Positions 13,300-58,443 of a DNA stretch of 64,000 bases are shown here, in pieces. Each line of letters begins with the position of its first letter. The stretch's first letter is position 1. Below the pieces are notes generated by a model. It had not been told where the DNA came from and did not search any database. It was given only the letters and a program-made list of their open reading frames with translations. The stretch lies in contig NC_087258.1 in assembly GCF_037042905.1 (NCBI RefSeq), positions 7,626,001 through 7,690,000 of the forward strand, given 5' to 3'. Made by a program: the position numbers and the translations under genes. The stretch comes from Lytechinus pictus (Eukaryota).

Positions 13300-14709
13300 A
13301 TGGCAAATAATGGTCTTACCATTCCCGATGACGGATATGACTTTTCGAAGAAGAAATTGAGTGTCAACCTGAGCCATGTGTCTCTGACAAGTATCCAAAC
13401 ACCCAGTAGTGACAAGAAACAATCTGCCCTGGTATCCGTCAAAATGGGCCTTTGTAATATCTCGCCCTATTCCAAAAAAGGAAAACACCTCCAAATCCTG
13501 AAGATGGTTTTGTTTCCACTTCTTCCTGCTGCGGCATTGTTGATCTTTGTCAGTGTTGAACTGGACTCTACATTGCGCGAACGGGACAAACTAGAGGCAT
13601 CCAGGAGAGAAATAGCTCTCTCGAAAAGCGTTGGAGAACTGATCCACAGCATACAGGTCGAACGCTCGGAAGTTACCCTCTTTATCGTAAAATCCGAAAA
13701 CATGACGTCCACAGAATCCATTGTCTGGGGGGAACGTCTTCAAGACTGTTACAATAGAACAGATGATGCCCTTGCCAACCTACTTGAATGGCCTCTGAAA
13801 AATTCAGAAGAGTCTAATATGTACGACTCGAAGGGGACGTTTCAGTTGTATTTGGATGAAGAACGAGACATTTTATCTTCCGTTGACGTTGCAGAGGAGA
13901 TCCTTTTTTATTCCAATATCAACAAGGTTTTGATTGATTGGTTCATTGATACACTCCGAGAGAATGTCCACGAAGGTCTTTGGAATGAGATCGTATCCTA
14001 TCAATTCTTGGTCCAAGCAAAAGAGAATGTAGGACTTCTTATGGCCTACGGAGAAGAGGCGTTTTTGAATCGAACACTCCGAAATGAGGACTTTTTATCC
14101 TTCATGAAAAACGATATCCTTCTCACCTACAATCTCGCATCATCTTTTAAATTTTCCGGCGGCTACGCCAAGGACTTCTACGAGACCCTCATCATAACTT
14201 CTGGGATTGAAACTACTGTGCAAATCATGAGGGATGAAATCGTACGAACTCTAAGTGCTAACTCTTCAGGTATAATTACCTTATCATCAACAGACTGGTT
14301 CGGGAACCTCAGCGGGTATCTCAATGGCCTCAAGAAAGTCGAGGATGTCGTGATTGATCACATCGACGACATCATCGATGACAGCATCAGTGTTATCATA
14401 GACGAAGTAATCATTGACGGTATCCTATTCGGAATCATTGCCCTCGTGGCGCCAATCATCATATTCTTTGCCATCAGGACCACATCGAAGATCCAGGCCT
14501 ATGCCTTTGGACTAACCGTGAAGACCAAACAGCTGGCCAGTGAAAAGAAGAGAAGCGATTCCCTGCTTTATAGAATGCTTCCAAGAACAGTGGCTCAACA
14601 GCTCAAACTCAACATGACTGTCCCGGCTGAGAATTATGACAGTGTTACTATCTACTTCAGCGACATTGTGGGTTTCACCAAGCTTTCAGCCATCAGTAGC
14701 CCGATGCAG
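13300..14709 (+). CDS. NIT-domain transmembrane guanylyl cyclase (NIT-GC), coding exon 1 of 5 (TM1, NIT-like ectodomain, TM2, signalling helix, start of cyclase)
   Basis: First ATG after an in-frame stop (TAA 13249). TM1 MVLFPLLPAAALLIFVSV; NIT-like motifs ELIHSIQVERS and LVQAKENVG; TM2 GILFGIIALVAPIIIFFAI; EKKRSDSLLYRMLPRTVAQQL coiled helix; VTIYFSDIVGFT cyclase start. Donor CAG|GTAATT, phase 0. Confidence 0.9.
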
Positions 14710-14711
14710 GT

Positions 14712-14811
14712 AATTCAAATTCAAATTGAAATTGACATTCAAATTTCAAATTCAACTTCATATTCAAATTCGAACGGAAACTAAAATTCAAACTCAAATT
14801 AATATCAAAAT
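14712..14811 (-). mobile_element. Tail-only retro-insertion, degenerate (TTTGAA)n, flanked by a 19-bp direct repeat
   Basis: TCAGTAGCCCGATG(C/G)AGGT at 14693-14711 and 14812-14830. The insert uses the same hexamer as the LINE tail at 45139-45160. Confidence 0.65.
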
Positions 14812-36846: not shown

Positions 36847-37032
36847 NNNNNNNNNNNNNNNNNNNNNNNNNNNNNNNNNNNNNNNNNNNNNNNNNNNNNN
36901 NNNNNNNNNNNNNNNNNNNNNNNNNNNNNNNNNNNNNNNNNNNNNNNNNNNNNNNNNNNNNNNNNNNNNNNNNNNNNNNNNNNNNNNNNNNNNNNNNNNN
37001 NNNNNNNNNNNNNNNNNNNNNNNNNNNNNNNN
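36847..37032. other. Assembly gap (N run)
   Basis: Ns. Confidence 1.
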
Positions 37033-39009: not shown

Positions 39010-39031
39010 TTTATTTTACCTGATATTTATT
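39010..39031 (-). terminator. Candidate polyadenylation signals (2x AATAAA) for the - strand gene at 40303-42903
   Basis: TTTATT on + at 39010-39015 and 39026-39031, ~1.3 kb past the stop codon. The motif is common in AT-rich DNA. Confidence 0.4.
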
Positions 39032-40302
39032 CAAACTTTGGTACTTCATGAGTTCTTTCATAACATTGCATTAACAGTGTTCATATCTTCTGTGTTTTGT
39101 AAAGACTGGTCATAATCATGATAATACATCTATAATGTGCATTTTACCATAACAAAGACAGAGCACAGTGCAAATAAAGGTCTAGATACGTCTTAAAGAA
39201 GATTATTAGATATAGTTGGAGGTTGTGAATGCCTTCTTTGAATGCTAGTAGTCCATTCTGAAGTACAGTTCTTGCAGAGGGTATTTCCCCAATATATTAT
39301 AAAAATCAAGGGCGTAGGCTGGTTTTAGCATGAGGAGCGCACATCCTGGGGAGGTGGAACTGAAGTGGTATGGGGGTGCACATCTTGGGAAATCAGCTGC
39401 TGAAAGCAGAAGAAAGGGGTATTTCATTTTGCTTGCCAGTGAAGGAACTCCTCTACCTCAGCGGGAGAATACACGTGCACCCAGTGCACACCCAGCCTAG
39501 GCCCTTGGAAATCTTAATCGGGAGTCACTGAAATGAAAAAAAGTGTATGTAGAACAATTCACAGAATATATATCTTCCTATAACTTTTCCGGCAAATCTT
39601 GATACCTACCATCGACAGGAAGCTAGACCATTCGGCTGGATCTTTTGACTTTTAGACATAGAGAAAGGTTTGATGAAGTAATTAGTTTCAAGACGAGAAA
39701 AGTAGCTAGTCGGTTTGTGGACCCAATATTCAGAGTACGGAGGTCAGAACCGATACAAGGCATGCAGATTTATATGTATATATATATAAACATTGAGAAA
39801 TTTTAGTTGTCGGAGTATTAAACTCCACAAATTAGAGATTTTTTTTCTGGTGAATCGAGCAATGATAATTGCATTGTAATGGATCATTTAGGTATTTTGG
39901 CGGATTGCATCATTGGGATATAGCAAGTGGTTTGATTCTGGAATTCTAAACTTTACAAGAGGAAGGTGTTCCACTTTCAATACTGAGAATGATGGAGACG
40001 AACTAGATAAAACTTTTGCAAAGATGATCAATGTTACCGTTTTCAACAAAGACAGTAAAGATCGCACATACAGAAGAAAGGATGAATATATTGTTGATTC
40101 TTCTAATTTATCATAAACAACCTTAAAGATCATTTATCCTGATACAGAGAGACGTAAGGGATTAAAGAAAAGCGATCCAGTAATCCTACTGATTATGAAC
40201 AAGAACAAAAGTTGTATATGTACATAACTCTATTCCTCATCATATCATAACCAGGAATATATCAGTGTATCAAATCCTCTATCAACAGGTATATCGACCT
40301 TT

Positions 40303-42903
40303 CTACATAGAAGGTGTAGGTGGCGCAGGATCAAGAGGTGCATTCTGTGCTGCCCCCGCACATTGACCTATAGCCGAAGAAGCGCCGTATTGGGAGATGC
40401 TGCAACTGGCTGCTGAGCGTGCAAGGAAACTCAAGTAACCACCCTTTTCTTGCCAGCAGGAGAGGTTCTTTCCGCATTCCGTGGACCACCTCTCCATGAT
40501 GGATGTCAATGGTTGCTCGCTGGCACTTTGGGAATGTCGAAGCCAAGGACAGGCAGCAGTTAGCTGATCAAATACGCAAGATCCCATGGATTCCTGGAAG
40601 CTCTTGCATTGGGGTGTGCCGAGGGCAAGTTGATCAGTTGCAGGAACCTCAGCTACGGGTCCACACTGTCCGGCCTGCTGGTCGAATACATCGACCCCAT
40701 TGACAAGTCCTTGGCGCTTGCGTTGCCAGTTGGTCATGTTGGCAATCTGGCTGCAAGTGTCACAGACGCGGTTTACGCTAATACCGGCTTGTTGGAGTTG
40801 ACCCAATAGATTTGTGAATGTGGTGTCACCGAGAAGGGCGCTGAAGAGAGCCATTTTGCTTTCTTTAACGTATCCTAGAGCCACATCTACGTTTGCAAGA
40901 CCCCCTCGTCGTTTCTTAGTGAGGAGGCTGCGAAGAGCATGTTCGGATGGCATGTGCCAAGAGAAGAGGTGGACCTTACGCGGGGTTTGTCCATATCGTT
41001 GGATCATACCTGGAAGATCACGAAGGACAGCAGATGCAGGATCCTGACCGTGGGTCTCCATACCAGAGCGGAAAGCGATATTGACTGGAGTGCGCCCGGT
41101 TGTTCGTCCATTCTTCGGCACATTACAGGGATTAAGTGCTTGTTTCATTCCTGCATAGTCAAGTGCAAGCACAGCGAGACTCTTCTGTCCTGATATTCCA
41201 TTGGCGCCAAGGAATCCACCACAAAGATGTTTGTCCATGTACGTATTGTCCAGTGCAGCTGTTTCGGCCGGAGTAAGTTGAGCGTCTGGTGCTTGTGCAA
41301 TAGGAGCCGGTGCAAAGGCTATGTTTGGCTCATTACGGGCACCGACATTGGTTGTCTCTGTAAATGAACTTCCGATGCTTTGTCCTACTCCGTCAACAAC
41401 GGAAGGGTTCGAATTTCCACTGTTTGTGCCCTGTGAGTTTCCAGCTGCAGCTTGAGTACCTGCCCCTCCATTACCATTCATTCCAGTTGATCCCGTCGCT
41501 CCAGTAGCTCCATTTGCCGTCCCATTGGTAGCTCCCCCTTTTGGTGGATAGGTTGCTCCGTTTGAAGTTGTTGTTCCATTTGATGTAGCTCCCCCTTTTG
41601 GTGGATAGGTTGCTCCGTTTGAAGTTGTTGTTCCATTTGAGGTAGCTCCTCCACTTCCTGCTCCGTTGCTACCTCCACTTGATGGCCAATTTGCTGCTCC
41701 ATCTGGAGCGGCACCGTTTGCTCCTCCAGTGTTTACCCCATTTGTCGGTGAATTTCCTGCTCCAGTCGCCACTCCTCCAGTGTTTACCCCATTTGTCGGT
41801 GAATTTCCTGCTCCAGCCGCCACTCCTCCAGTTGCTGCTCCATTAGAGCCAATGTTTCCACCTCCTGGTATATCCCCTGGGCCCGCGCCTGCTCCACCTC
41901 CTGCTCCGCCTGTTGCTCCCATCGCTCCACCCTGTCCCCCGTTTTGTCCCCCAGATGCACCTTGATACCCTCCGTATGAAAAGCTAACAGACCCTCCAGA
42001 CCCACCAGAGCCACCAAATCCTCCTGTTGGATCGTAAAATGATGGACCAGCTGACCCGCTTCCCATGGAAGGGCCATAATTGCTACCTCCTAAGGAGAAT
42101 GATGTCCCTAAACTCCCACCTTGTCCTTCTCCCGCTCCCTCTGCTGCTTCACCCTGCTCACCCATTGCCTCAGCGTCTGCTTCTGCTGCTTCAGCCTCTG
42201 CTTCTTGAAGGTCCTCCATTGCTTCAGCCTCGGCTTCTGCTGCTTCCGCTTCTAGTTCGGCAGCTTCTTCTGCATCCTCGGCCTCTTGTTCTGCTAATTC
42301 CTGAGCGGCTTCTTCCTCTTGTTCGGCCATTTCCTGTGCTGCTTCAGCATCTTGTTCTTGTTCCATCTCCTGTCCTGCTTCACCTTGATACATATTCTGT
42401 GCAGCTTCAGCGTCAGCTTCGGCCTGTTGTTCCCGCAATTCTTCCGCAGCTTCGGCCTCTTCTTCTGCTAATTCCTGTGCTGCTTCTGTATCTTGCTGAT
42501 GCATTCCCTGTGCGGCGAAGGCATTTTGCTGTCCATATTCAGCTTGCTGCTCTCGCATCTGCTGTGCATATTGAGCTTCCCTTTCAGCGGCTTCTGCCTG
42601 CTGTTCCTGTAATTTCTGTGCACGCTCTTCTTCTTGTTCTCGCAATTCCTCTGCGGCTTCGGCTTCCTGTTCCGCCTGCTCTGCCATTTGCTCTCGCATC
42701 TCTTGAGCAGCCTCAGGGTCTTGTTGCTGCATCCACTGATTGTTGGGACGGAATTGTTGCTGTCGTTGGCCGTTTGGCCGGAACTGTTGTTGCTGTCCCA
42801 GGCCAAGTCGCTTGATGGGCTGCCCTCTCCACCATGGTCGTTGGCAAGTTGCAGGGGCGATGGTCGCCACAAGAACAACGGCAAGGATGAATACCCCTCG
42901 CAT
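40303..42903 (-). CDS. Secreted 866-aa protein: signal peptide, Q-rich, E/A-acidic and G-rich repeats, degenerate AID/APOBEC/SNAD-like deaminase fold, Cys-rich C-terminal domain
   Basis: Uninterrupted GC-rich ORF. The true start is MRGVFILAVVLVATIAPATC (signal peptide), 15 nt after a splice acceptor (...CTTACAG| at 42919/42918), so the first 20 aa of the track ORF are intron/UTR. The CDS call is firm; the domain call is by eye. Confidence 0.9.
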   Translation of the reverse strand: MRGVFILAVVLVATIAPATCQRPWWRGQPIKRLGLGQQQQFRPNGQRQQQFRPNNQWMQQQDPEAAQEMREQMAEQAEQEAEAAEELREQEEERAQKLQEQQAEAAEREAQYAQQMREQQAEYGQQNAFAAQGMHQQDTEAAQELAEEEAEAAEELREQQAEADAEAAQNMYQGEAGQEMEQEQDAEAAQEMAEQEEEAAQELAEQEAEDAEEAAELEAEAAEAEAEAMEDLQEAEAEAAEADAEAMGEQGEAAEGAGEGQGGSLGTSFSLGGSNYGPSMGSGSAGPSFYDPTGGFGGSGGSGGSVSFSYGGYQGASGGQNGGQGGAMGATGGAGGGAGAGPGDIPGGGNIGSNGAATGGVAAGAGNSPTNGVNTGGVATGAGNSPTNGVNTGGANGAAPDGAANWPSSGGSNGAGSGGATSNGTTTSNGATYPPKGGATSNGTTTSNGATYPPKGGATNGTANGATGATGSTGMNGNGGAGTQAAAGNSQGTNSGNSNPSVVDGVGQSIGSSFTETTNVGARNEPNIAFAPAPIAQAPDAQLTPAETAALDNTYMDKHLCGGFLGANGISGQKSLAVLALDYAGMKQALNPCNVPKNGRTTGRTPVNIAFRSGMETHGQDPASAVLRDLPGMIQRYGQTPRKVHLFSWHMPSEHALRSLLTKKRRGGLANVDVALGYVKESKMALFSALLGDTTFTNLLGQLQQAGISVNRVCDTCSQIANMTNWQRKRQGLVNGVDVFDQQAGQCGPVAEVPATDQLALGTPQCKSFQESMGSCVFDQLTAACPWLRHSQSASEQPLTSIMERWSTECGKNLSCWQEKGGYLSFLARSAASCSISQYGASSAIGQCAGAAQNAPLDPAPPTPSM
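41529..41832 (-). repeat. Coding tandem repeats: 2x57 nt (GGATSNGTTTSNGATYPPK) and 2x51 nt (GGVAxGAGNSPTNGVNT)
   Basis: Near-identical nucleotide duplications within the ORF. Confidence 0.9.
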
Positions 42904-45140
42904 CTTTGCTTGAAAATTCTGTAAGTTTAGAGGGAAATAATGAAAAGGGAGGAAGAAAGTCATTATCTTCTTGTGACTCTACATATATCAAAGTTCTTTG
43001 CTTGAGAAATCAGCGAAATGTAAAACACGACCCTGAGCTTGATGGGCAAATCTGCAACTCATCACGCGATTCACTTTCACAAATTCGATGGCATAATTAT
43101 CATTGATTTTGCAAAACTAATCAAATAATTACCGTTGGTTAAGGTTATGGGGTGAAAAGTAAGTAACTATAAATTTTGAGGCGATTTGAATGTGGTTGTA
43201 AAAAAATGATAGTTCGGCTAAAGGATAGTATTTGCTTGTATTCGCCATTAAAAACTATTTAATCATATGAATAAAATTGTTTCTTCTTCTTTCTTAAGAT
43301 TGATTTTGGCATTTGAGTTTATGAGGGCAAATTCAAAACGTCTGAAATTACAATAGCCAATGGCGATATACCTTGATACCTAAATACAAGGCAAAACAAA
43401 GGGGGGGGGGGGGGGGAGAAGAAAGAACGGAAAAAGGGGTGAAAAATTGTATTCTTTTCTTAAAAAAATACGTCAGAATATAACACACGTTCAGATTTTC
43501 ATTTTACGAAGGTAACATTTCTTGGTTACAAGGTCATCACTTAAATTCATTTTATGTTTTATCAAAATTGTGCGCGAGCAAAGGTAGAGGGTCCATTTTT
43601 TTCATTTTTCATAAGTAATCCATTAAGATCCGTAGGAATTGAAATTTGCTAGAGAATCAAAGGATTTCGATGAAAGTATTTAAGTTGAAGAAGTAAATTA
43701 TCCAAGAGAAGGGGGGGGGGGTCCATATCCCTAAATCCCAAACGAGTTCATCAATGGAAATTAATGTTGTGAAGCTTTGACTTCCAAATGATTTACATAG
43801 TGTTTGCACCGACTCCCATCCGACGAGGGGGTTATGATGTCGGTAGTTTTCTTCATCCCACCCGCTCGAAGCGCGGAAGCTTTCATCATAAAATTTGTTG
43901 AAGCCTTTCAGGATAAGAAATGAACTTGATGTGCCAAGATTAGGAGCAGATATGTGCAGATAAGAGGTTGGGCGCTTTCCCCTCCCTATCTTGAAAAGTG
44001 CGCAATGTTTCAATTTTCCCCGTTTTTTTCGAATAGAAAAAAATATCGTGCCGAGGCTCTCTTGTTCTCCTCAATACCTACATCACTTTTATTTCATATT
44101 TCATGCAGATGGGCTTTGTATGATCAAGGAATTCGATTGTAAGAAACAGTGACCACCGGCCGGATGGGCATGCATAATCATTATGATGGAATTGACCAAG
44201 GAAAGAGGTGTTTCCATGCAGCTCGGACAAAAACTAAAGCTTTGAAATTATATCAGACTTCAAAACAAAGGGGTCGTCTTCTAGTACTCCCATTTTATTG
44301 CATAAATTTGCTTAAATGAAATAAAAATCTCTATAAAGAGATTTTGTTTGTTTGAGCGTGCAATAAGGTTAGGGTACACGTGCAGGATCAGACTTGATGG
44401 TTTGCATCATTTCTTAAAAGAAGGGAGATATCAATTTTCGGCATTAAGATATTTCCAAGACTTTGTTTTCCTTTGTTCTCATCTCCCTATTCTACCGTAT
44501 ACTTTCAATCTAATTCTTCCTATTCTTTACTGCAAACCCCCCCCCCGAACTTTTAGCAAGCCAATGGGAAGGGGTATCCTGCTCCCCCCGTATACTTTAA
44601 AATAATCTACTTAAATTTGAATATGAAGGGAAGGGGTACTTATTAGATTTTCTATCAAAACATGAAGAGTTTATCGGCAAAATGAAAATAATATTGTCAC
44701 TTTATTATAAAAAATAATATTAAGTACCATTTCCGTCAGCTATCTTTACACATTTGAGTAGGTTTGGTAAAATAACAGTTTCAAAAGCCTCAGGACACAT
44801 ACACAGTATGAAAATTTAACAATTGCAAGACAAGTATTTAAATGAATTATTGTATAAATAGCTTTATGAAAACTGTTAAAAATTGATTATTTTCAAATTA
44901 AGGTATTAAAACGATACAGTGGTAACACCATGGAATTACCGTGATGGTTTTTCCAGGGTAACAACATACAACTTGAATAAAGATAACATGTCATAACATG
45001 AACAACAAAAGCAATAACGATAACAAAAACGACCCTGTCGTCAAACTGGACTAAAAAAAGCAAATAGTTTGCTTAGTTATCCTTTTTTTAATACCAATGG
45101 TATTATATATCATCAATATTTACATAATGTAATCAACTTT

Positions 45141-47141
45141 CAAATTCAAATTCAAATTCATTTATTTCACTTCCATCAAACAAAAACAAATTGTATACCA
45201 TATATAAAACATAAATATTTGTATCCGTTGCAAACAAAATTAATTATACATATGTAGTGAAAAAAAAAAAAAACTTAGACGATTTGGGCAACACATTGTA
45301 GGTTTTAAATATATATACTATTTTTCAATAGAAATTAAATTAAGATGGAAATGGAGGGACCCACTAAAAAGCAATGCTTGTACAATGTGGGCCCCTCAAG
45401 AAATAACAAAATAACAAAGTATAAATACAGATAATCAAATGAGAAAAGAATGAATAAATGAGAGGGAAATACTCACAAAATAAATACAAAGTAATAAAAA
45501 ATATACAGTTTGGTGAAGGACAAAACAACCCGTCCTAAAAATATCTACCCTTCCCACCCCCCCCCCAGAAAAACTTGAGAAGAAAAAAAAAGGGAAAAAG
45601 GGGGGAGAATGCCCTGAGAAGATGGATGGGTGCTGCTGTACGTAGATAGAACACATGCCGTCGTGGACTCAAGCAAACTGGATTCAATGATGTGTATAAG
45701 AGGAGAAAAAATATATAAAATAACCTGGAAAGAATATAATGCACGAAAAATGTGATTGATGCCGTTAAACAAATAACCGGTAGGAAGGCGGATAAGCGGA
45801 CTGGAGAGGAGAAAATAGAGGAGAGGATAGACACAATAATGAGCACATCTGAGAAGGACTTGTGTCAGATTTTTTTAATAAAAAAGGATAATAACTTTAT
45901 GTTTTAATTTTAGTTTAAAGTAATAATGATGATGACTTGACATAATAATGATGATGACTTGACAGAAATGATGAATTAAAATTAATTTGGGAGTATATTA
46001 TAAGGTTTTAATAGAGATAATTTGAATTTAGTCTTAAAAGAATTCAAAGATTTTGCATTTGTTATATCATTATGAAGTGAGTTCCATAACTTCGGTCCAT
46101 CGTATATAAATGTGTTCTGAGCCCGCAAAGTTCTTAAAAGTGGTAAATGAAATTCACCCATTCGCCTTGTTGGATAGTTGTGAATGGATTGATTTTTTGG
46201 AAACATTGAATTGAATACATTTGGGAGGTTGTTGTTGTTATAGTTATACATAAACTGACCGAGATTAAACAAATATAAGTCCTTAATTTTCAATATTCTA
46301 TGTTAAAAAAATAATGGGTCAGTATGAGACAAATATGCCGTGTGACATATAATACGTAGAGACTTCTTTTGTAATAGGAGTAATTTGTCTAAGAGTGTTT
46401 GTTGTGTGTTACCCCACGCTAAAATTCCATAATTTAAATAAGGCAATATAAGGGATGAATATAATGTAAGCAGGGACGATAATGGTAAACAAAATTTAAG
46501 CTTGTTAATTATACCAATGTTGCGTGAAATAGTTTTACATATGTTATCTATGTGAAATTTCCATGAGAGCTTATTATCGACTGTTATTCCAAGAAACTTA
46601 ATATGGGATACATTTTCCAAGGGAGTTCCATCCAAAATAATATCAACAGGAAGTGTATTTATGGAGTTGCTAAACAACATGTATTTTGTTTTTTGAAGAT
46701 TTAGTGACAATTTATTTGCTCTTATCCATTCGGTAACATTTTCTAGTTCAGAGTTGATTATATTAGCAAGGTGAAGAGGATTTTTATGTGAAAAGAATAA
46801 GTTAGAGTCGTCCGCAAAGAGAATGAAAGAAAGAACGTCTGATGATCTACAAAAATCATTAATATAAACTATAAACAAAATCGGGCCTAAAATACTACCC
46901 TGGGGAACTCCACAATTATTTTTTTTCATTTGAGAATTGCAACCGTTTAAAAAGACATATTGCTTCCTATTCAAGAGGTAGCTCCTGAACCACTCCAAGG
47001 CATTCCCACGCACTCCATAATGATGTAATTTGTTAAGTAAAATATCATGATTAATGGTGTCGAAGGCCTTGGAGAAGTCCAGGAACAAACCAATTAAATG
47101 AGAAGATTTATCGATTGAATGTGCCGCTTTTTCAATGAAAC
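45141..47141 (-). mobile_element. 5'-truncated CR1/L2-group LINE (RT domain, 3' UTR, (TTTGAA)n tail)
   Basis: RT motifs FLDFSKAFDTINH, GVPQGSILGP, LFADD and KFLG. One frameshift in the A-run at ~46305. Tail at 45139-45160. 8-bp TSD TCAACTTT at 45133-45140 and 47142-47149. Confidence 0.93.
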
Positions 47142-47339
47142 TCAACTTTATAAAACAAGCATAAAATAAGTTACTTATAAAATACCAAATCTTTTAAACA
47201 AATCAATTCCTGAACAGAAGCGCAAATATTTTACACAACTCAAACAACTAGAGACCGATCCATTAAGTCATGCCTGAGTATGTTTTTAAAAAAGAGTGAT
47301 CGCACTTTAAAAGTGAAAACATTATTTGCTAACAGTAGG

Positions 47340-47492
47340 ATTAATATTGTTATCATTATTATCATTATTATTATCTTCATTATTATTATAAGCAGTAGTA
47401 GTGGTAGTATCAATGTCATTATCAATATCATCATGATTATTCTTATCATGATCATCATCATCATTATCTTCATTATCATCACTATCATCAAT
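47340..47492. repeat. (ATT/ATC)n microsatellite
   Basis: Read directly. Confidence 0.9.
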
Positions 47493-48285
47493 ATAGGTTT
47501 CCTCGTTCAACAATGTCTCCCATGATGTAAAACAACATTTTGAGCATCAAAATATCTGAGTTTTTTTTCATTTTGCCTAAAGCTAATGTATTTTAAAAAG
47601 CATAATTAAGAAATTCATAAGCGAATATGATTTAAAATTTGAAACCGGAGGAAGCTGATGGATAAGATTTTATAAATGTGAGGGTTTCGAATATTAGATG
47701 ATTAATAATACTAACGAAGCAAAGATGAACAAAAATTCCTGTCTATACCTTTTATGACCTCTGCAAAGTGAAAATTTGTCTTAAATATCCGTTCAGAAGT
47801 TATTCATTGAATTTATAAAAAATATTCCTGTCGATTATTTGCTCAAAAAGACCTTATTAACTTCTATTTTTGAAATCGTAAAAGTACCTTTTGTTGTCTT
47901 ATTTGGCAGTGCAGTGTATAATCTTAGTTGTCGAATACCAATCAAGATCTCTAAATTCAATACTAGCTTGAAGATGTTTAAATGCAATAAAAAATAGTTT
48001 ATTCAAACTAAGAACTTTTCACACTTACATAGATAATTTTAAAAGTCATCACACTTTCAACTATCACTCTTATCATTTTAAATGAAAGGTTAATGGATCG
48101 AACAGTAATTTGAACGTTTTGATGGTTCATGGTTCATAAGAAACATCGCATCTCAGAGGGCCCTAAAATATATGTTTATACAAAATATTCCTAAATTCAT
48201 ATTAAAACAACTTAAATCATGAATAGTAGAAATATGCTAAAAATTATAACACGCGTCAATAAAATAGGATACATTTTTCACTTAC

Positions 48286-48402
48286 CTCTAACTTGACAAG
48301 AAATAAAGCAAAAGTTGAGGTTACGAGGGAAGTCAAAGAAACCCCTCCAAATCAGCAGCAGACCAGCAAAATAGGAGGACTGTTAAGACCCATCTATTTA
48401 TA
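48286..48402 (-). promoter_or_regulatory. Candidate TATA box and non-coding exon 1 of the 866-aa gene
   Basis: TATAAATA on - at 48402-48395 and a perfect donor GAG|GTAAGT at 48286/48285, which would pair with the acceptor at 42919. Confidence 0.5.
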
Positions 48403-56851: not shown

Positions 56852-57029
56852 NNNNNNNNNNNNNNNNNNNNNNNNNNNNNNNNNNNNNNNNNNNNNNNNN
56901 NNNNNNNNNNNNNNNNNNNNNNNNNNNNNNNNNNNNNNNNNNNNNNNNNNNNNNNNNNNNNNNNNNNNNNNNNNNNNNNNNNNNNNNNNNNNNNNNNNNN
57001 NNNNNNNNNNNNNNNNNNNNNNNNNNNNN
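56852..57029. other. Assembly gap (N run)
   Basis: Ns. Confidence 1.
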
Positions 57030-58255: not shown

Positions 58256-58443
58256 NNNNNNNNNNNNNNNNNNNNNNNNNNNNNNNNNNNNNNNNNNNNN
58301 NNNNNNNNNNNNNNNNNNNNNNNNNNNNNNNNNNNNNNNNNNNNNNNNNNNNNNNNNNNNNNNNNNNNNNNNNNNNNNNNNNNNNNNNNNNNNNNNNNNN
58401 NNNNNNNNNNNNNNNNNNNNNNNNNNNNNNNNNNNNNNNNNNN
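58256..58443. other. Assembly gap (N run)
   Basis: Ns. Confidence 1.

What the first reader, a model, noticed from the sequence alone, without database searches (positions are those of the whole stretch)
41240..42903. Block-copolymer N-terminal half resembling biomineral or extracellular structural proteins
Seen in the sequence: the signal peptide is followed by Q-rich QQQFRPN repeats, then a ~200-aa Glu/Ala/Gln helical tract with a recurring QDxEAAQE[ML] motif and almost no basic residues in its second half, then ~250 aa of Gly/Ala/Asn/Thr repeats and an APAP linker. Established knowledge: acidic, Gly/Gln-rich disordered tracts joined to one folded domain are typical of echinoderm skeletal-matrix and adhesive proteins; the SM30/SM50 family uses a C-type lectin domain for that role. 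Inference: here the folded anchor appears to be a pseudo-deaminase, implying co-option of an immune-type enzyme fold as a structural, Ca-binding or phase-separating protein.
Basis: partly seen in the sequence, partly recalled or inferred. Interest (0 to 1): 0.7.

Follow-up and report, generated by a model that had tools for sequence, protein, structure and literature searches.

The report
Acidic disordered arm of secreted pseudo-deaminase
The stretch is the low-complexity front half of a real, transcribed sea-urchin gene for a secreted protein in which a strongly acidic helical tract and a glycine-rich floppy tract lead to an inactive deaminase-like domain; the block layout is real and its negative charge is kept in every relative found, but nothing yet shows that it is a skeleton or glue protein.

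Summary
Observation confirmed. Window 40306-42903 (minus strand) is one 866-aa coding exon, 99% identical over the C-terminal 325 aa to a Lytechinus pictus protein (XP_054769068.1).

Layout:
- signal peptide, residues 1-20
- basic Q/R-rich block, 21-60
- polyanionic E/A/Q tract, 61-250, made of degenerate 11-residue units and predicted as two long helices
- nearly uncharged Gly/Ser/Asn/Thr tract, 251-525, predicted disordered, with two length-polymorphic repeats
- APAP hinge
- deaminase-fold domain lacking the HxE and PCxxC zinc motifs
- Cys-rich helical tail

The gene is transcribed and spliced: a 5'UTR exon lies near 48286-48367, followed by a 5.4-kb GT-AG intron.

Only eight relatives were found, all echinoderm: two Lytechinus, two Diadema and three sea stars. 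All have a signal peptide, an N-half with 0-2 Cys and net charge -18 to -98, and a C-domain with 10-12 Cys. The N-half sequences are almost unalignable. dN/dS in the E/A/Q block is 0.18.

My reading is that the N-half is a charge-selected extracellular polyanionic arm. The pseudo-deaminase anchor is supported at fold level.

The biomineral/adhesive reading is untested and weakly disfavoured:
- no C-type lectin domain
- no peptides of the Patiria ortholog in the supplements held for the published sea-star skeletal proteome
- no ortholog in the S. purpuratus protein sets searched

Tissue of expression is unknown.

The parts
48395..48402 (-). TATAAATA box about 30 nt upstream of the 5' end of the RNA contig
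   Evidence: Read from the sequence.
48286..48367 (-). Exon 1, non-coding 5'UTR. The 5' end is approximate; the donor GTAAGT follows at 48285.
   Evidence: The 76-nt loose end of the X9 contig at 42924 maps uniquely to 48292-48321 and onward. The donor was read. The aligner absorbed the exon-1 end TTAGAG into the intron-end TTACAG with one mismatch.
42919..48285 (-). Intron 1 (5.4 kb, GT-AG), containing a LINE reverse-transcriptase fragment at 46303-47145
39022..42918 (-). Exon 2: 15 nt of 5'UTR, the whole CDS, and about 1.28 kb of 3'UTR. AATAAA lies at 39026-39031.
   Evidence: Contigs of runs X9 and X1 cover 39022-42924 and 39040-42842 respectively, and X9 has next to nothing and X1 nothing in 42940-44900.
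40303..42903 (-). CDS, 866 codons plus stop, with no intron
   Evidence: It is also intronless in L. variegatus, Asterias and Diadema.
42844..42903 (-). Signal peptide, residues 1-20
   Evidence: Sequence; conserved in orthologs. No dedicated predictor was run.
42724..42843 (-). Basic Q/R/W-rich block, residues 21-60 (net charge per residue +0.17), with two QQQFRPN copies
   Evidence: predicted disordered
42154..42723 (-). Polyanionic E/A/Q tract, residues 61-250 (net charge per residue -0.23, then -0.40). It is built of degenerate 11-residue units with one L/M per unit and is predicted as two long helices.
   Evidence: A 33-bp TRF period lies at 42281-42358. There is a weak compositional hit to TolA.
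41329..42153 (-). Near-neutral Gly/Ser/Ala/Thr/Asn tract, residues 251-525, predicted disordered, with 8 Phe/Tyr clustered in residues 269-313
41721..41832 (-). 51-bp (17-aa) tandem repeat, 2.2 copies at 98% identity; copy number differs between alleles and between species
41527..41649 (-). 57-bp (19-aa) tandem repeat, 2.2 copies at 96% identity; copy number differs between alleles and between species
41284..41328 (-). Hinge with APAP, residues 526-540
40729..41283 (-). Deaminase-fold domain without zinc ligands, residues 541-725
40306..40728 (-). Cys-rich, mostly helical tail, residues 726-866. Its 'ExW..ECG...CW' module also occurs 7 times in an annelid protein.

Best explanation
The stretch encodes the N-terminal half of a secreted, single-copy protein found so far only in echinoderms. 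This half is a polyelectrolyte arm rather than a folded domain. It consists of a short basic Q/R block, about 190 residues of polyanionic E/A/Q sequence that probably forms long solvent-exposed helices, and about 275 residues of uncharged Gly/Ser/Asn/Thr coil that changes length by repeat slippage.

What selection keeps is composition and charge, not sequence. I infer that the arm works through bulk electrostatics: it binds cations (Ca2+/Mg2+) or cationic partners, and it holds the disulfide-rich C-terminal module (dead deaminase fold plus Cys-rich tail) out as an extended, soluble binding head in an extracellular or secretory compartment.

Shown: gene structure, transcription, architecture, conservation of the charge pattern, purifying selection, and the fold of the anchor. 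Inferred: cation or partner binding, the spacer role, and the extracellular site of action.
For: - The gene is real and expressed. Spliced RNA contigs are confined to the gene, and orthologs are annotated.
- In all seven homologs analysed, the N-half has 0-2 Cys, net charge -18 to -98 and pI 4.05-4.5. The C-domain has 10-12 Cys and pI 6.2-8.9.
- The chemistry of the acidic block differs between lineages: E/A/Q in Lytechinus, E/S/G in Diadema, S/D/E in sea stars. The N-halves barely align. The shared property is therefore charge.
- Each ortholog also carries a smaller basic block (and the sequences).
- dN/dS between L. pictus and L. variegatus is 0.18 for the E/A/Q block and 0.33 for the Gly block, against 0.075 for the deaminase-like domain and 0.21 for the tail.
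- Codon usage in the tract is mixed (GAA 42 / GAG 17; four Ala codons), so it is not a plain microsatellite.
- AlphaFold2 predicts helices at 63-171 and 182-248 and coil elsewhere in the N-half.
- The only family-library hit is a sub-threshold compositional match to the long helical stalk of TolA.
Against: - There is no functional datum of any kind.
- The substitution counts behind dN/dS are small (8 synonymous and 6 non-synonymous in the E/A/Q block).
- The helices are predictions for a highly charged sequence, from a 5-sequence alignment.
- The phyletic pattern is patchy. No ortholog was found in Strongylocentrotus, holothurians, crinoids or ophiuroids, so the gene is dispensable in many echinoderms or is missed by annotation.
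- 'Acts by charge' is a broad statement that covers several specific roles.
Confidence: 0.5

Rival explanations
1. Biomineral matrix or adhesive protein. The acidic and Gly-rich tracts bind Ca2+/CaCO3 or drive phase separation in the skeleton, tooth or tube-foot glue, with the dead deaminase fold serving as the folded anchor.
For: - It is secreted, strongly acidic, repetitive, fast-evolving and has one folded domain. That is the generic description of matrix proteins given in PMC5460417.
- Diadema and sea-star orthologs carry 5-30 S-x-E/D motifs in the acidic block. From established knowledge, that is the Fam20C-type motif of secreted phosphoproteins.
- Aromatic residues set in a Gly/Ser context at 269-313 resemble sticker-spacer sequences.
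Against: - There is no C-type lectin or other matrix-type domain and no similarity to any other protein in the genome.
- The Lytechinus acidic block has no Ser or Asp-rich motifs (0 S-x-E/D).
- Six tryptic peptides of the Patiria ortholog are absent from the two supplements held for the P. miniata skeletal proteome. The authors also report no acidic repetitive proteins there. One of the two files was truncated when stored.
- A six-term search of the A. rubens footprint paper's main text gave nothing relevant.
- No ortholog was found in S. purpuratus protein sets.
Confidence: 0.15
2. Pro-region or packaging domain. The acidic half masks, chaperones or condenses the C-terminal module in the secretory pathway (granin-like, or a nucleic-acid mimic covering the old substrate face of the deaminase fold), and is cleaved off or displaced on release.
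For: - The acidic N-half is paired with a mildly basic C-domain in 6 of 7 orthologs.
- Sea-star orthologs have R/K clusters ('RKR', 'RRR', 'KR') between the acidic block and the domain.
- A deaminase fold is ancestrally a nucleic-acid binder (PMC5889660).
Against: - Sea urchins have no basic site between the Gly tract and the domain.
- The net charge of the C-domain is small (-2 to +8).
- 275 residues of neutral spacer are hard to explain for a mask.
Confidence: 0.15
3. A tolerated low-complexity expansion with no function of its own. Only the C-terminal half matters, and the N-half is slippage-generated filler.
For: - Repeat copy number varies between L. pictus alleles and between species.
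- N-half length ranges from 207 to 520 residues, and its sequence is unalignable across orders.
Against: - An acidic block with few or no Cys is present in every ortholog across the urchin-sea star split.
- The E/A/Q block is 97% identical between the two Lytechinus species, with dN/dS 0.18.
- It is not a DNA-level microsatellite.
Confidence: 0.1

Closest known systems
Sea-urchin spicule-matrix proteins (SM30/SM50 family)
   Same: Both are secreted, carry long repetitive Gly-rich or acidic low-complexity tracts attached to a single folded domain, and have repeats that evolve fast (PMC5460417).
   Different: The folded domain here is a deaminase fold rather than a C-type lectin. There is no sequence similarity, and this is a single-copy gene rather than a gene family. 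Presence in mineral has not been shown.
[quoted passage not shown]
   Same: Both have a signal peptide plus an AID/APOBEC-type fold. A SNAD1/SNAD2 cluster is the best Atlas shape match among named families (TM 0.56). Extra cysteines follow strand 5, including a CxxC.
   Different: There is no Pfam SNAD match. HxE and PCxxC are absent in all members. SNADs are about 200-aa proteins without a 500-residue low-complexity arm. The 2018 survey reports SNADs from vertebrates and sponges, not echinoderms.
Acidic intrinsically disordered secretory proteins (SIBLING/SCPP-type phosphoproteins, coral and mollusc acid-rich proteins, granins). This comparison rests on my own knowledge.
   Same: Signal peptide, pI near 4, no Cys in the acidic part, and conservation of composition but not sequence.
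   Different: In Lytechinus the charge comes from Glu in an Ala/Gln helical context, without Ser/Asp phospho-motifs. The C-terminal module is unrelated to any of those families.
TolA domain II / long Ala-Glu-rich helical stalks
   Same: Sub-threshold compositional match over residues 48-258 (E 5.9e-4, 19 bits against a cut-off of 59), and a predicted long helix.
   Different: There is no homology. TolA is Lys-rich as well as Glu-rich, whereas this tract has no basic residue after R157.

Membership tests
SM30/SM50 spicule-matrix proteins | C-type lectin domain | tested here: not met
   No Pfam family matched at E up to 10, for the whole protein or the C-terminal 325 aa. The fold is a deaminase fold.
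SM30/SM50 spicule-matrix proteins | Pro/Gly-rich acidic repeats related to the SM repeats | tested here: inconclusive
   A Gly-rich repeat tract is present.
SM30/SM50 spicule-matrix proteins | Expression in skeletogenic cells or occlusion in mineral | not testable with these tools
   Run metadata are coded. Only the Patiria ortholog could be checked against a skeletal proteome, and it was not found.
AID/APOBEC superfamily (SNAD clade) | Five-stranded cytidine-deaminase fold (a1-b1-b2-a2-b3-a3-b4-a4-b5) | tested here: met
   The AF2 model has this topology. Foldseek's top 50 are all CDA-fold deaminases, 47 of them APOBEC/AID. In the Atlas, a SNAD1/2 cluster matches at TM 0.56. With VIA-align, AID scores Z 9.7 and the top 26 hits are all deaminases. 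Core block pLDDT is 54-88, so this is a fold-level call only.
AID/APOBEC superfamily (SNAD clade) | HxE and PCxxC zinc/catalytic motifs | tested here: not met
   At the start of helix 2 the family reads THGQ / SRGQ / nothing. At the start of helix 3 it reads P-S-E-H-A or P-S/A-x. Neither Cys is present in any of the 7 aligned members.
AID/APOBEC superfamily (SNAD clade) | Sequence-profile match (Pfam SNAD/APOBEC models, solved deaminases) | tested here: not met
   No Pfam hit for any member. A profile search of the PDB found no deaminase. PF18744 found nothing in the genome, though that search also found nothing in its control genomes.
AID/APOBEC superfamily (SNAD clade) | N-terminal signal peptide (SNAD1/2/4) | tested here: met
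   A hydrophobic N-terminus is present in all orthologs. No dedicated predictor was available.
Acidic secretory calcium-binding phosphoproteins / acid-rich matrix proteins | Secreted, largely Cys-free, strongly acidic disordered region | tested here: met
   Net charge is -59 and pI 4.05 over residues 21-540. All orthologs range from -18 to -98. Disorder is predicted for the non-helical parts.
Acidic secretory calcium-binding phosphoproteins / acid-rich matrix proteins | Dense S-x-E/D (Golgi-kinase) motifs or poly-Asp | tested here: not met
   There are 0 such motifs in both Lytechinus proteins, 5-6 in Diadema and 9-30 in sea stars.
Acidic secretory calcium-binding phosphoproteins / acid-rich matrix proteins | Ca2+ or mineral binding | not testable with these tools
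   This needs a biochemical assay.
Coiled-coil or single-alpha-helix stalk | Regular hydrophobic seam or E/K alternation; self-association | tested here: inconclusive
   One L/M falls about every 11-14 residues, but there is no spectral peak at period 3.5, 3.67, 7 or 11. Only 8 basic residues occur in residues 56-262. The homodimer prediction gave no answer (score 0.00).

The most novel reading that the evidence does not exclude
An old family shared by sea urchins and sea stars, and found so far only in echinoderms, in which a catalytically dead, SNAD-like AID/APOBEC fold became the folded head of a polyanionic extracellular scaffold protein. Its arm is kept only as charge and is rebuilt with different chemistry in each lineage: Glu/Ala helices in Lytechinus, Ser/Glu in Diadema, Ser/Asp in sea stars. 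This would be the first deaminase fold recruited to a non-enzymatic role in matrix, cation binding or mineral association.
Probability: 0.2. Interest if true: 0.7.

Novelty: new variant of a known kind. Interest (0 to 1): 0.42.

Why it matters
Acidic, repetitive, disordered arms on one folded domain recur in biomineral, adhesive and secretory-granule proteins, so the N-half alone is a familiar kind of sequence. Two things are unusual here.

First, the partner is a deaminase fold that lost its zinc site before sea urchins and sea stars diverged. The protein is still kept as a single-copy, secreted, disulfide-rich gene.

Second, the arm is a clean example of selection on charge pattern with complete turnover of sequence and even of residue chemistry.

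L. pictus is a genetically tractable urchin, so a knockout and in situ hybridisation could settle whether this is an immune-derived fold co-opted for an extracellular structural or ion-binding job. The family is currently unannotated or misnamed in the databases ('golgin subfamily A member 6-like', 'homeotic protein female sterile-like'). Those names are compositional artefacts.

Tried and rejected
- TAL-effector (Hax3) hit to the C-domain (E 3.5e-8). Rejected: each repeat aligns at i-E-value 4.6 or worse, and the total is inflated by the target's repeats.
- Pfam, NCBIfam and PDB sequence or profile searches gave nothing meaningful.
- Atlas feature and structure search of the Cys-rich tail gave only generic helical matches.
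- Word-indexed homolog searches, at full length and with the domain alone, added only Diadema setosum and Patiria miniata. No shorter relatives were found.
- Paralog searches in the genome with the N-half, the C-domain, the family profile and PF18744 found only the gene itself.
- Literature searches by accession, LOC id and database name gave no relevant paper.
- The sea-star footprint paper has no supplements held and gave no relevant term match in its main text.
- Self-association of residues 60-250 as a homodimer: complex prediction returned no answer (score 0.00, controls not run). This is not evidence either way.
- Run X13 (bulk RNA, about 6% of the run read) had no reads on the gene. The sample type is unknown, so this says nothing about tissue.
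- The 'TYPPK' similarity to the mussel foot protein decapeptide was rejected. There are 1-2 copies only, and the motif is not conserved in L. variegatus.
- The antisense ORFs over the tract (for example 42027-42815 on the plus strand) are low-complexity artefacts.
Full report
**What is at the coordinates**

The window has one long ORF on the minus strand, 40303-42963. Starting at the Met at 42903 it gives 866 residues.

The genome is a Lytechinus:
- The C-terminal 325 aa are 99% identical to XP_054769068.1 of L. pictus (829 aa).
- The whole protein is 87% identical, gaps counted, to XP_041479334.1 of L. variegatus (840 aa).
- The assembly is 812 Mb.

Both database names ('homeotic protein female sterile-like', 'golgin subfamily A member 6-like protein 2') are evidently composition-driven. 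No Pfam family matches.

**Gene structure and expression**

Contigs of two public runs (X9, X1) cover 39022-42924 and 39040-42842. X9 has next to nothing and X1 nothing across 42940-44900. That pattern fits RNA, not genomic DNA.

The X9 contig continues past 42924 with 76 letters that map uniquely to 48292 onward. There the genome reads exon...TTAGAG|GTAAGT, and the acceptor is ...TTACAG|AATTTTC at 42919/42918.

The resulting structure is:
- a non-coding exon 1 at about 48286-48367, with a TATAAATA box 30 nt upstream
- a 5.4-kb GT-AG intron that holds a LINE reverse-transcriptase fragment
- one exon carrying the entire CDS and about 1.28 kb of 3'UTR, with AATAAA at 39026-39031

The CDS is also intronless in L. 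variegatus, Asterias and Diadema. The share of the gene's 31-mers differs several-fold between runs of the same study (0.77 against 0.25-0.27), which suggests stage- or tissue-specific expression. Sample descriptions are coded, so the tissue is unknown.

**Anatomy of the N-terminal half**

| Residues | Feature |
|---|---|
| 1-20 | Signal peptide |
| 21-60 | Basic Q/R/W-rich block, net charge per residue +0.17; QQQFRPN occurs exactly twice |
| 61-250 | E/A/Q tract, net charge per residue -0.23 in the first 100 residues and -0.40 in the last 90; no basic residue after R157 |
| 251-525 | Nearly uncharged tract (charged fraction 0.04), rich in Gly, Ser, Ala, Thr and Asn |
| 531-534 | APAP, conserved in Diadema |

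The E/A/Q tract is built from degenerate 11-residue units of the type EAAQE[LM]xEQxx, with one Leu or Met every 11-14 residues.

The Gly-rich tract has eight Phe/Tyr clustered at residues 269-313. It also has two near-perfect tandem duplications, of 17 aa (51 bp, 98% identity) and 19 aa (57 bp, 96% identity). These two units are exactly what distinguishes the 866-aa window allele from the 829-aa L. pictus RefSeq protein. They also differ in L. variegatus, so the tract is length-polymorphic.

AlphaFold2 on the full length predicts helices at 63-171 and 182-248, with 10-residue block mean pLDDT between 39 and 86, mostly 70-86 in the well-predicted stretches. Residues 21-62 and 249-544 are coil at pLDDT 22-36. 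Codon usage in the acidic tract is mixed, and TRF finds only weak periodicity there. It is therefore not a simple microsatellite.

**The folded half**

Residues 541-725 were modelled from a 6-sequence alignment (core block pLDDT 54-88). They show the a1-b1-b2-a2-b3-a3-b4-a4-b5 order of cytidine deaminases. Three independent structure searches agree:
- Foldseek against the PDB: the top 50 hits are all CDA-fold deaminases, 47 of them APOBEC/AID chains and 3 dCMP deaminases (best E 2e-3, TM by target about 0.5).
- ESM Atlas shape search: best matches are an unnamed mollusc cluster (TM 0.60) and a SNAD1/SNAD2 cluster (TM 0.56).
- VIA-align across 48,161 chains: AID Z 9.7, APOBEC3G 9.5, and the top 26 hits are all deaminases.

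At sequence level there is no match to Pfam or to solved deaminases.

The zinc and catalytic motifs are absent in every family member. The HxE position reads THGQ in Lytechinus, SRGQ in Diadema and nothing in sea stars. The PCxxC position reads P-S-E-H-A or P-S/A-x.

Ten to twelve cysteines (12 in six of the seven analysed orthologs) fit a disulfide-bonded extracellular protein. The tail (726-866) is helical and contains an 'ExW..ECG...CW.+K.G' module. That module also occurs seven times in a secreted protein of the annelid Owenia.

**The family**

An exhaustive HMMER pass over 1.84 billion representative proteins found only four related clusters plus the Owenia tail repeats. Word-indexed searches added D. 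setosum and Patiria and nothing shorter.

The eight members are L. pictus, L. variegatus, D. antillarum, D. setosum, Acanthaster, Patiria and Asterias, with two L. pictus alleles. There is no paralog in this genome.

No protein from Strongylocentrotus, holothurians, crinoids or ophiuroids was found. Whether that reflects loss or missed annotation cannot be settled here.

**What is conserved in the N-half**

The sequence is not conserved. Lytechinus against Diadema aligns only over the last ~80-100 residues before the domain (residues 457-537) and a few islands such as YAQQMR. Sea-star N-halves align neither with urchins nor well with each other.

The property is conserved. In all seven homologs analysed, the N-half has 0-2 Cys, net charge -18 to -98 and pI 4.05-4.5. 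It also carries a smaller basic block, which lies before the acidic block in urchins and after it in sea stars.

The chemistry differs between lineages: Glu/Ala/Gln in Lytechinus, Glu/Ser/Gly in Diadema, Ser/Asp/Glu in sea stars. S-x-E/D motifs number 0, 5-6 and 9-30 respectively.

dN/dS between the two Lytechinus species:

| Block | dN/dS |
|---|---|
| E/A/Q tract | 0.18 |
| Gly tract | 0.33 |
| Deaminase-like domain | 0.075 |
| Cys-rich tail | 0.21 |

dS across these blocks is 0.07-0.14, and the counts are small.

**Interpretation**

The evidence supports a charge-selected polyanionic arm plus a flexible neutral spacer on a secreted, non-catalytic binding module.

The mechanism I consider most likely is inferred, not shown. 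The arm binds cations or cationic partners and keeps the head extended and soluble in seawater-like extracellular fluid.

- There is no C-type lectin domain and no gene-family expansion.
- The Lytechinus acidic block lacks Asp/Ser chemistry.
- Six tryptic peptides of the Patiria ortholog are absent from the two supplementary files held for the P. miniata skeletal proteome. That paper also reports no acidic repetitive proteins in the sea-star skeleton. One of the two files was truncated in storage.
- A search of the main text of the A. rubens footprint paper for six terms found only 'acidic', inside a domain name.

A pro-region or masking role is a second rival. It is helped by basic clusters upstream of the domain in sea stars. 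It is hurt by their absence in urchins and by the small net charge of the C-domain. Pure filler is unlikely given the conservation of the acidic block and the low dN/dS.

**Comparison with the literature**

The 2018 survey of AID/APOBEC-like deaminases reports secreted SNADs in vertebrates and sponges. It places echinoderm members in classical clades, and it notes inactive copies only in another clade. A secreted, inactive, SNAD-like fold fused to a 500-residue low-complexity arm is not described there, nor in the SNAD1 paper I consulted.

I therefore rate the whole protein as a new variant of known kinds. The N-half on its own is an ordinary acidic or Gly-rich low-complexity region, apart from the clean case it makes for composition-only conservation.

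An earlier first-stage note on the same window (s1-313788) proposed the dead-deaminase fold. My tests agree with it.

Noticed in passing
window 13300-14784 (+): A 494-aa open exon with a transmembrane segment, followed by the start of a guanylate-cyclase catalytic domain. In L. variegatus the gene next to the ortholog carries NIT + HNOBA + Guanylate_cyc domains in the same convergent orientation (L002 18289-22523), so synteny is conserved.
   Followed up: partly
window 46303-47145 (-): A 280-aa ORF that looks like a non-LTR (LINE) reverse-transcriptase fragment, lying inside intron 1 of the gene.
   Followed up: no
window 39197-39393: This stretch of the 3'UTR has much higher contig depth than its flanks in all runs, and it is the only part matched by runs X2 and X13. 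It is probably an interspersed repeat shared with many other transcripts. No tRNA was detected.
   Followed up: partly
P0004 (Owenia fusiformis CAH1800560.1), residues about 30-560: A secreted annelid protein made of seven copies of a roughly 40-aa six-Cys module. The module shares the motif 'ExW..ECG...CW.+K.G' with the C-terminal tail of the echinoderm family (window 40306-40620). It appears to be an unnamed small extracellular module.
   Followed up: partly
P0005 (Asterias) residues 90-340; P0003 and P0008 N-halves: Sea-star orthologs share a short motif, DP[DPS][FY]VP[SP], inside the acidic block. It is tandemly repeated about eight times in Asterias within a roughly 50-aa unit. It is absent from the urchin proteins.
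   Followed up: no
window 36847-37032, 56852-57029, 58256-58443: Three runs of N (186, 178 and 188 bases).
   Followed up: no
window 42027-42815 (+) and other short ORFs over 41478-42991: Several ORFs of 78-262 aa lie in other frames and on the opposite strand of the low-complexity tract. They are by-products of the biased composition, not genes.
   Followed up: partly
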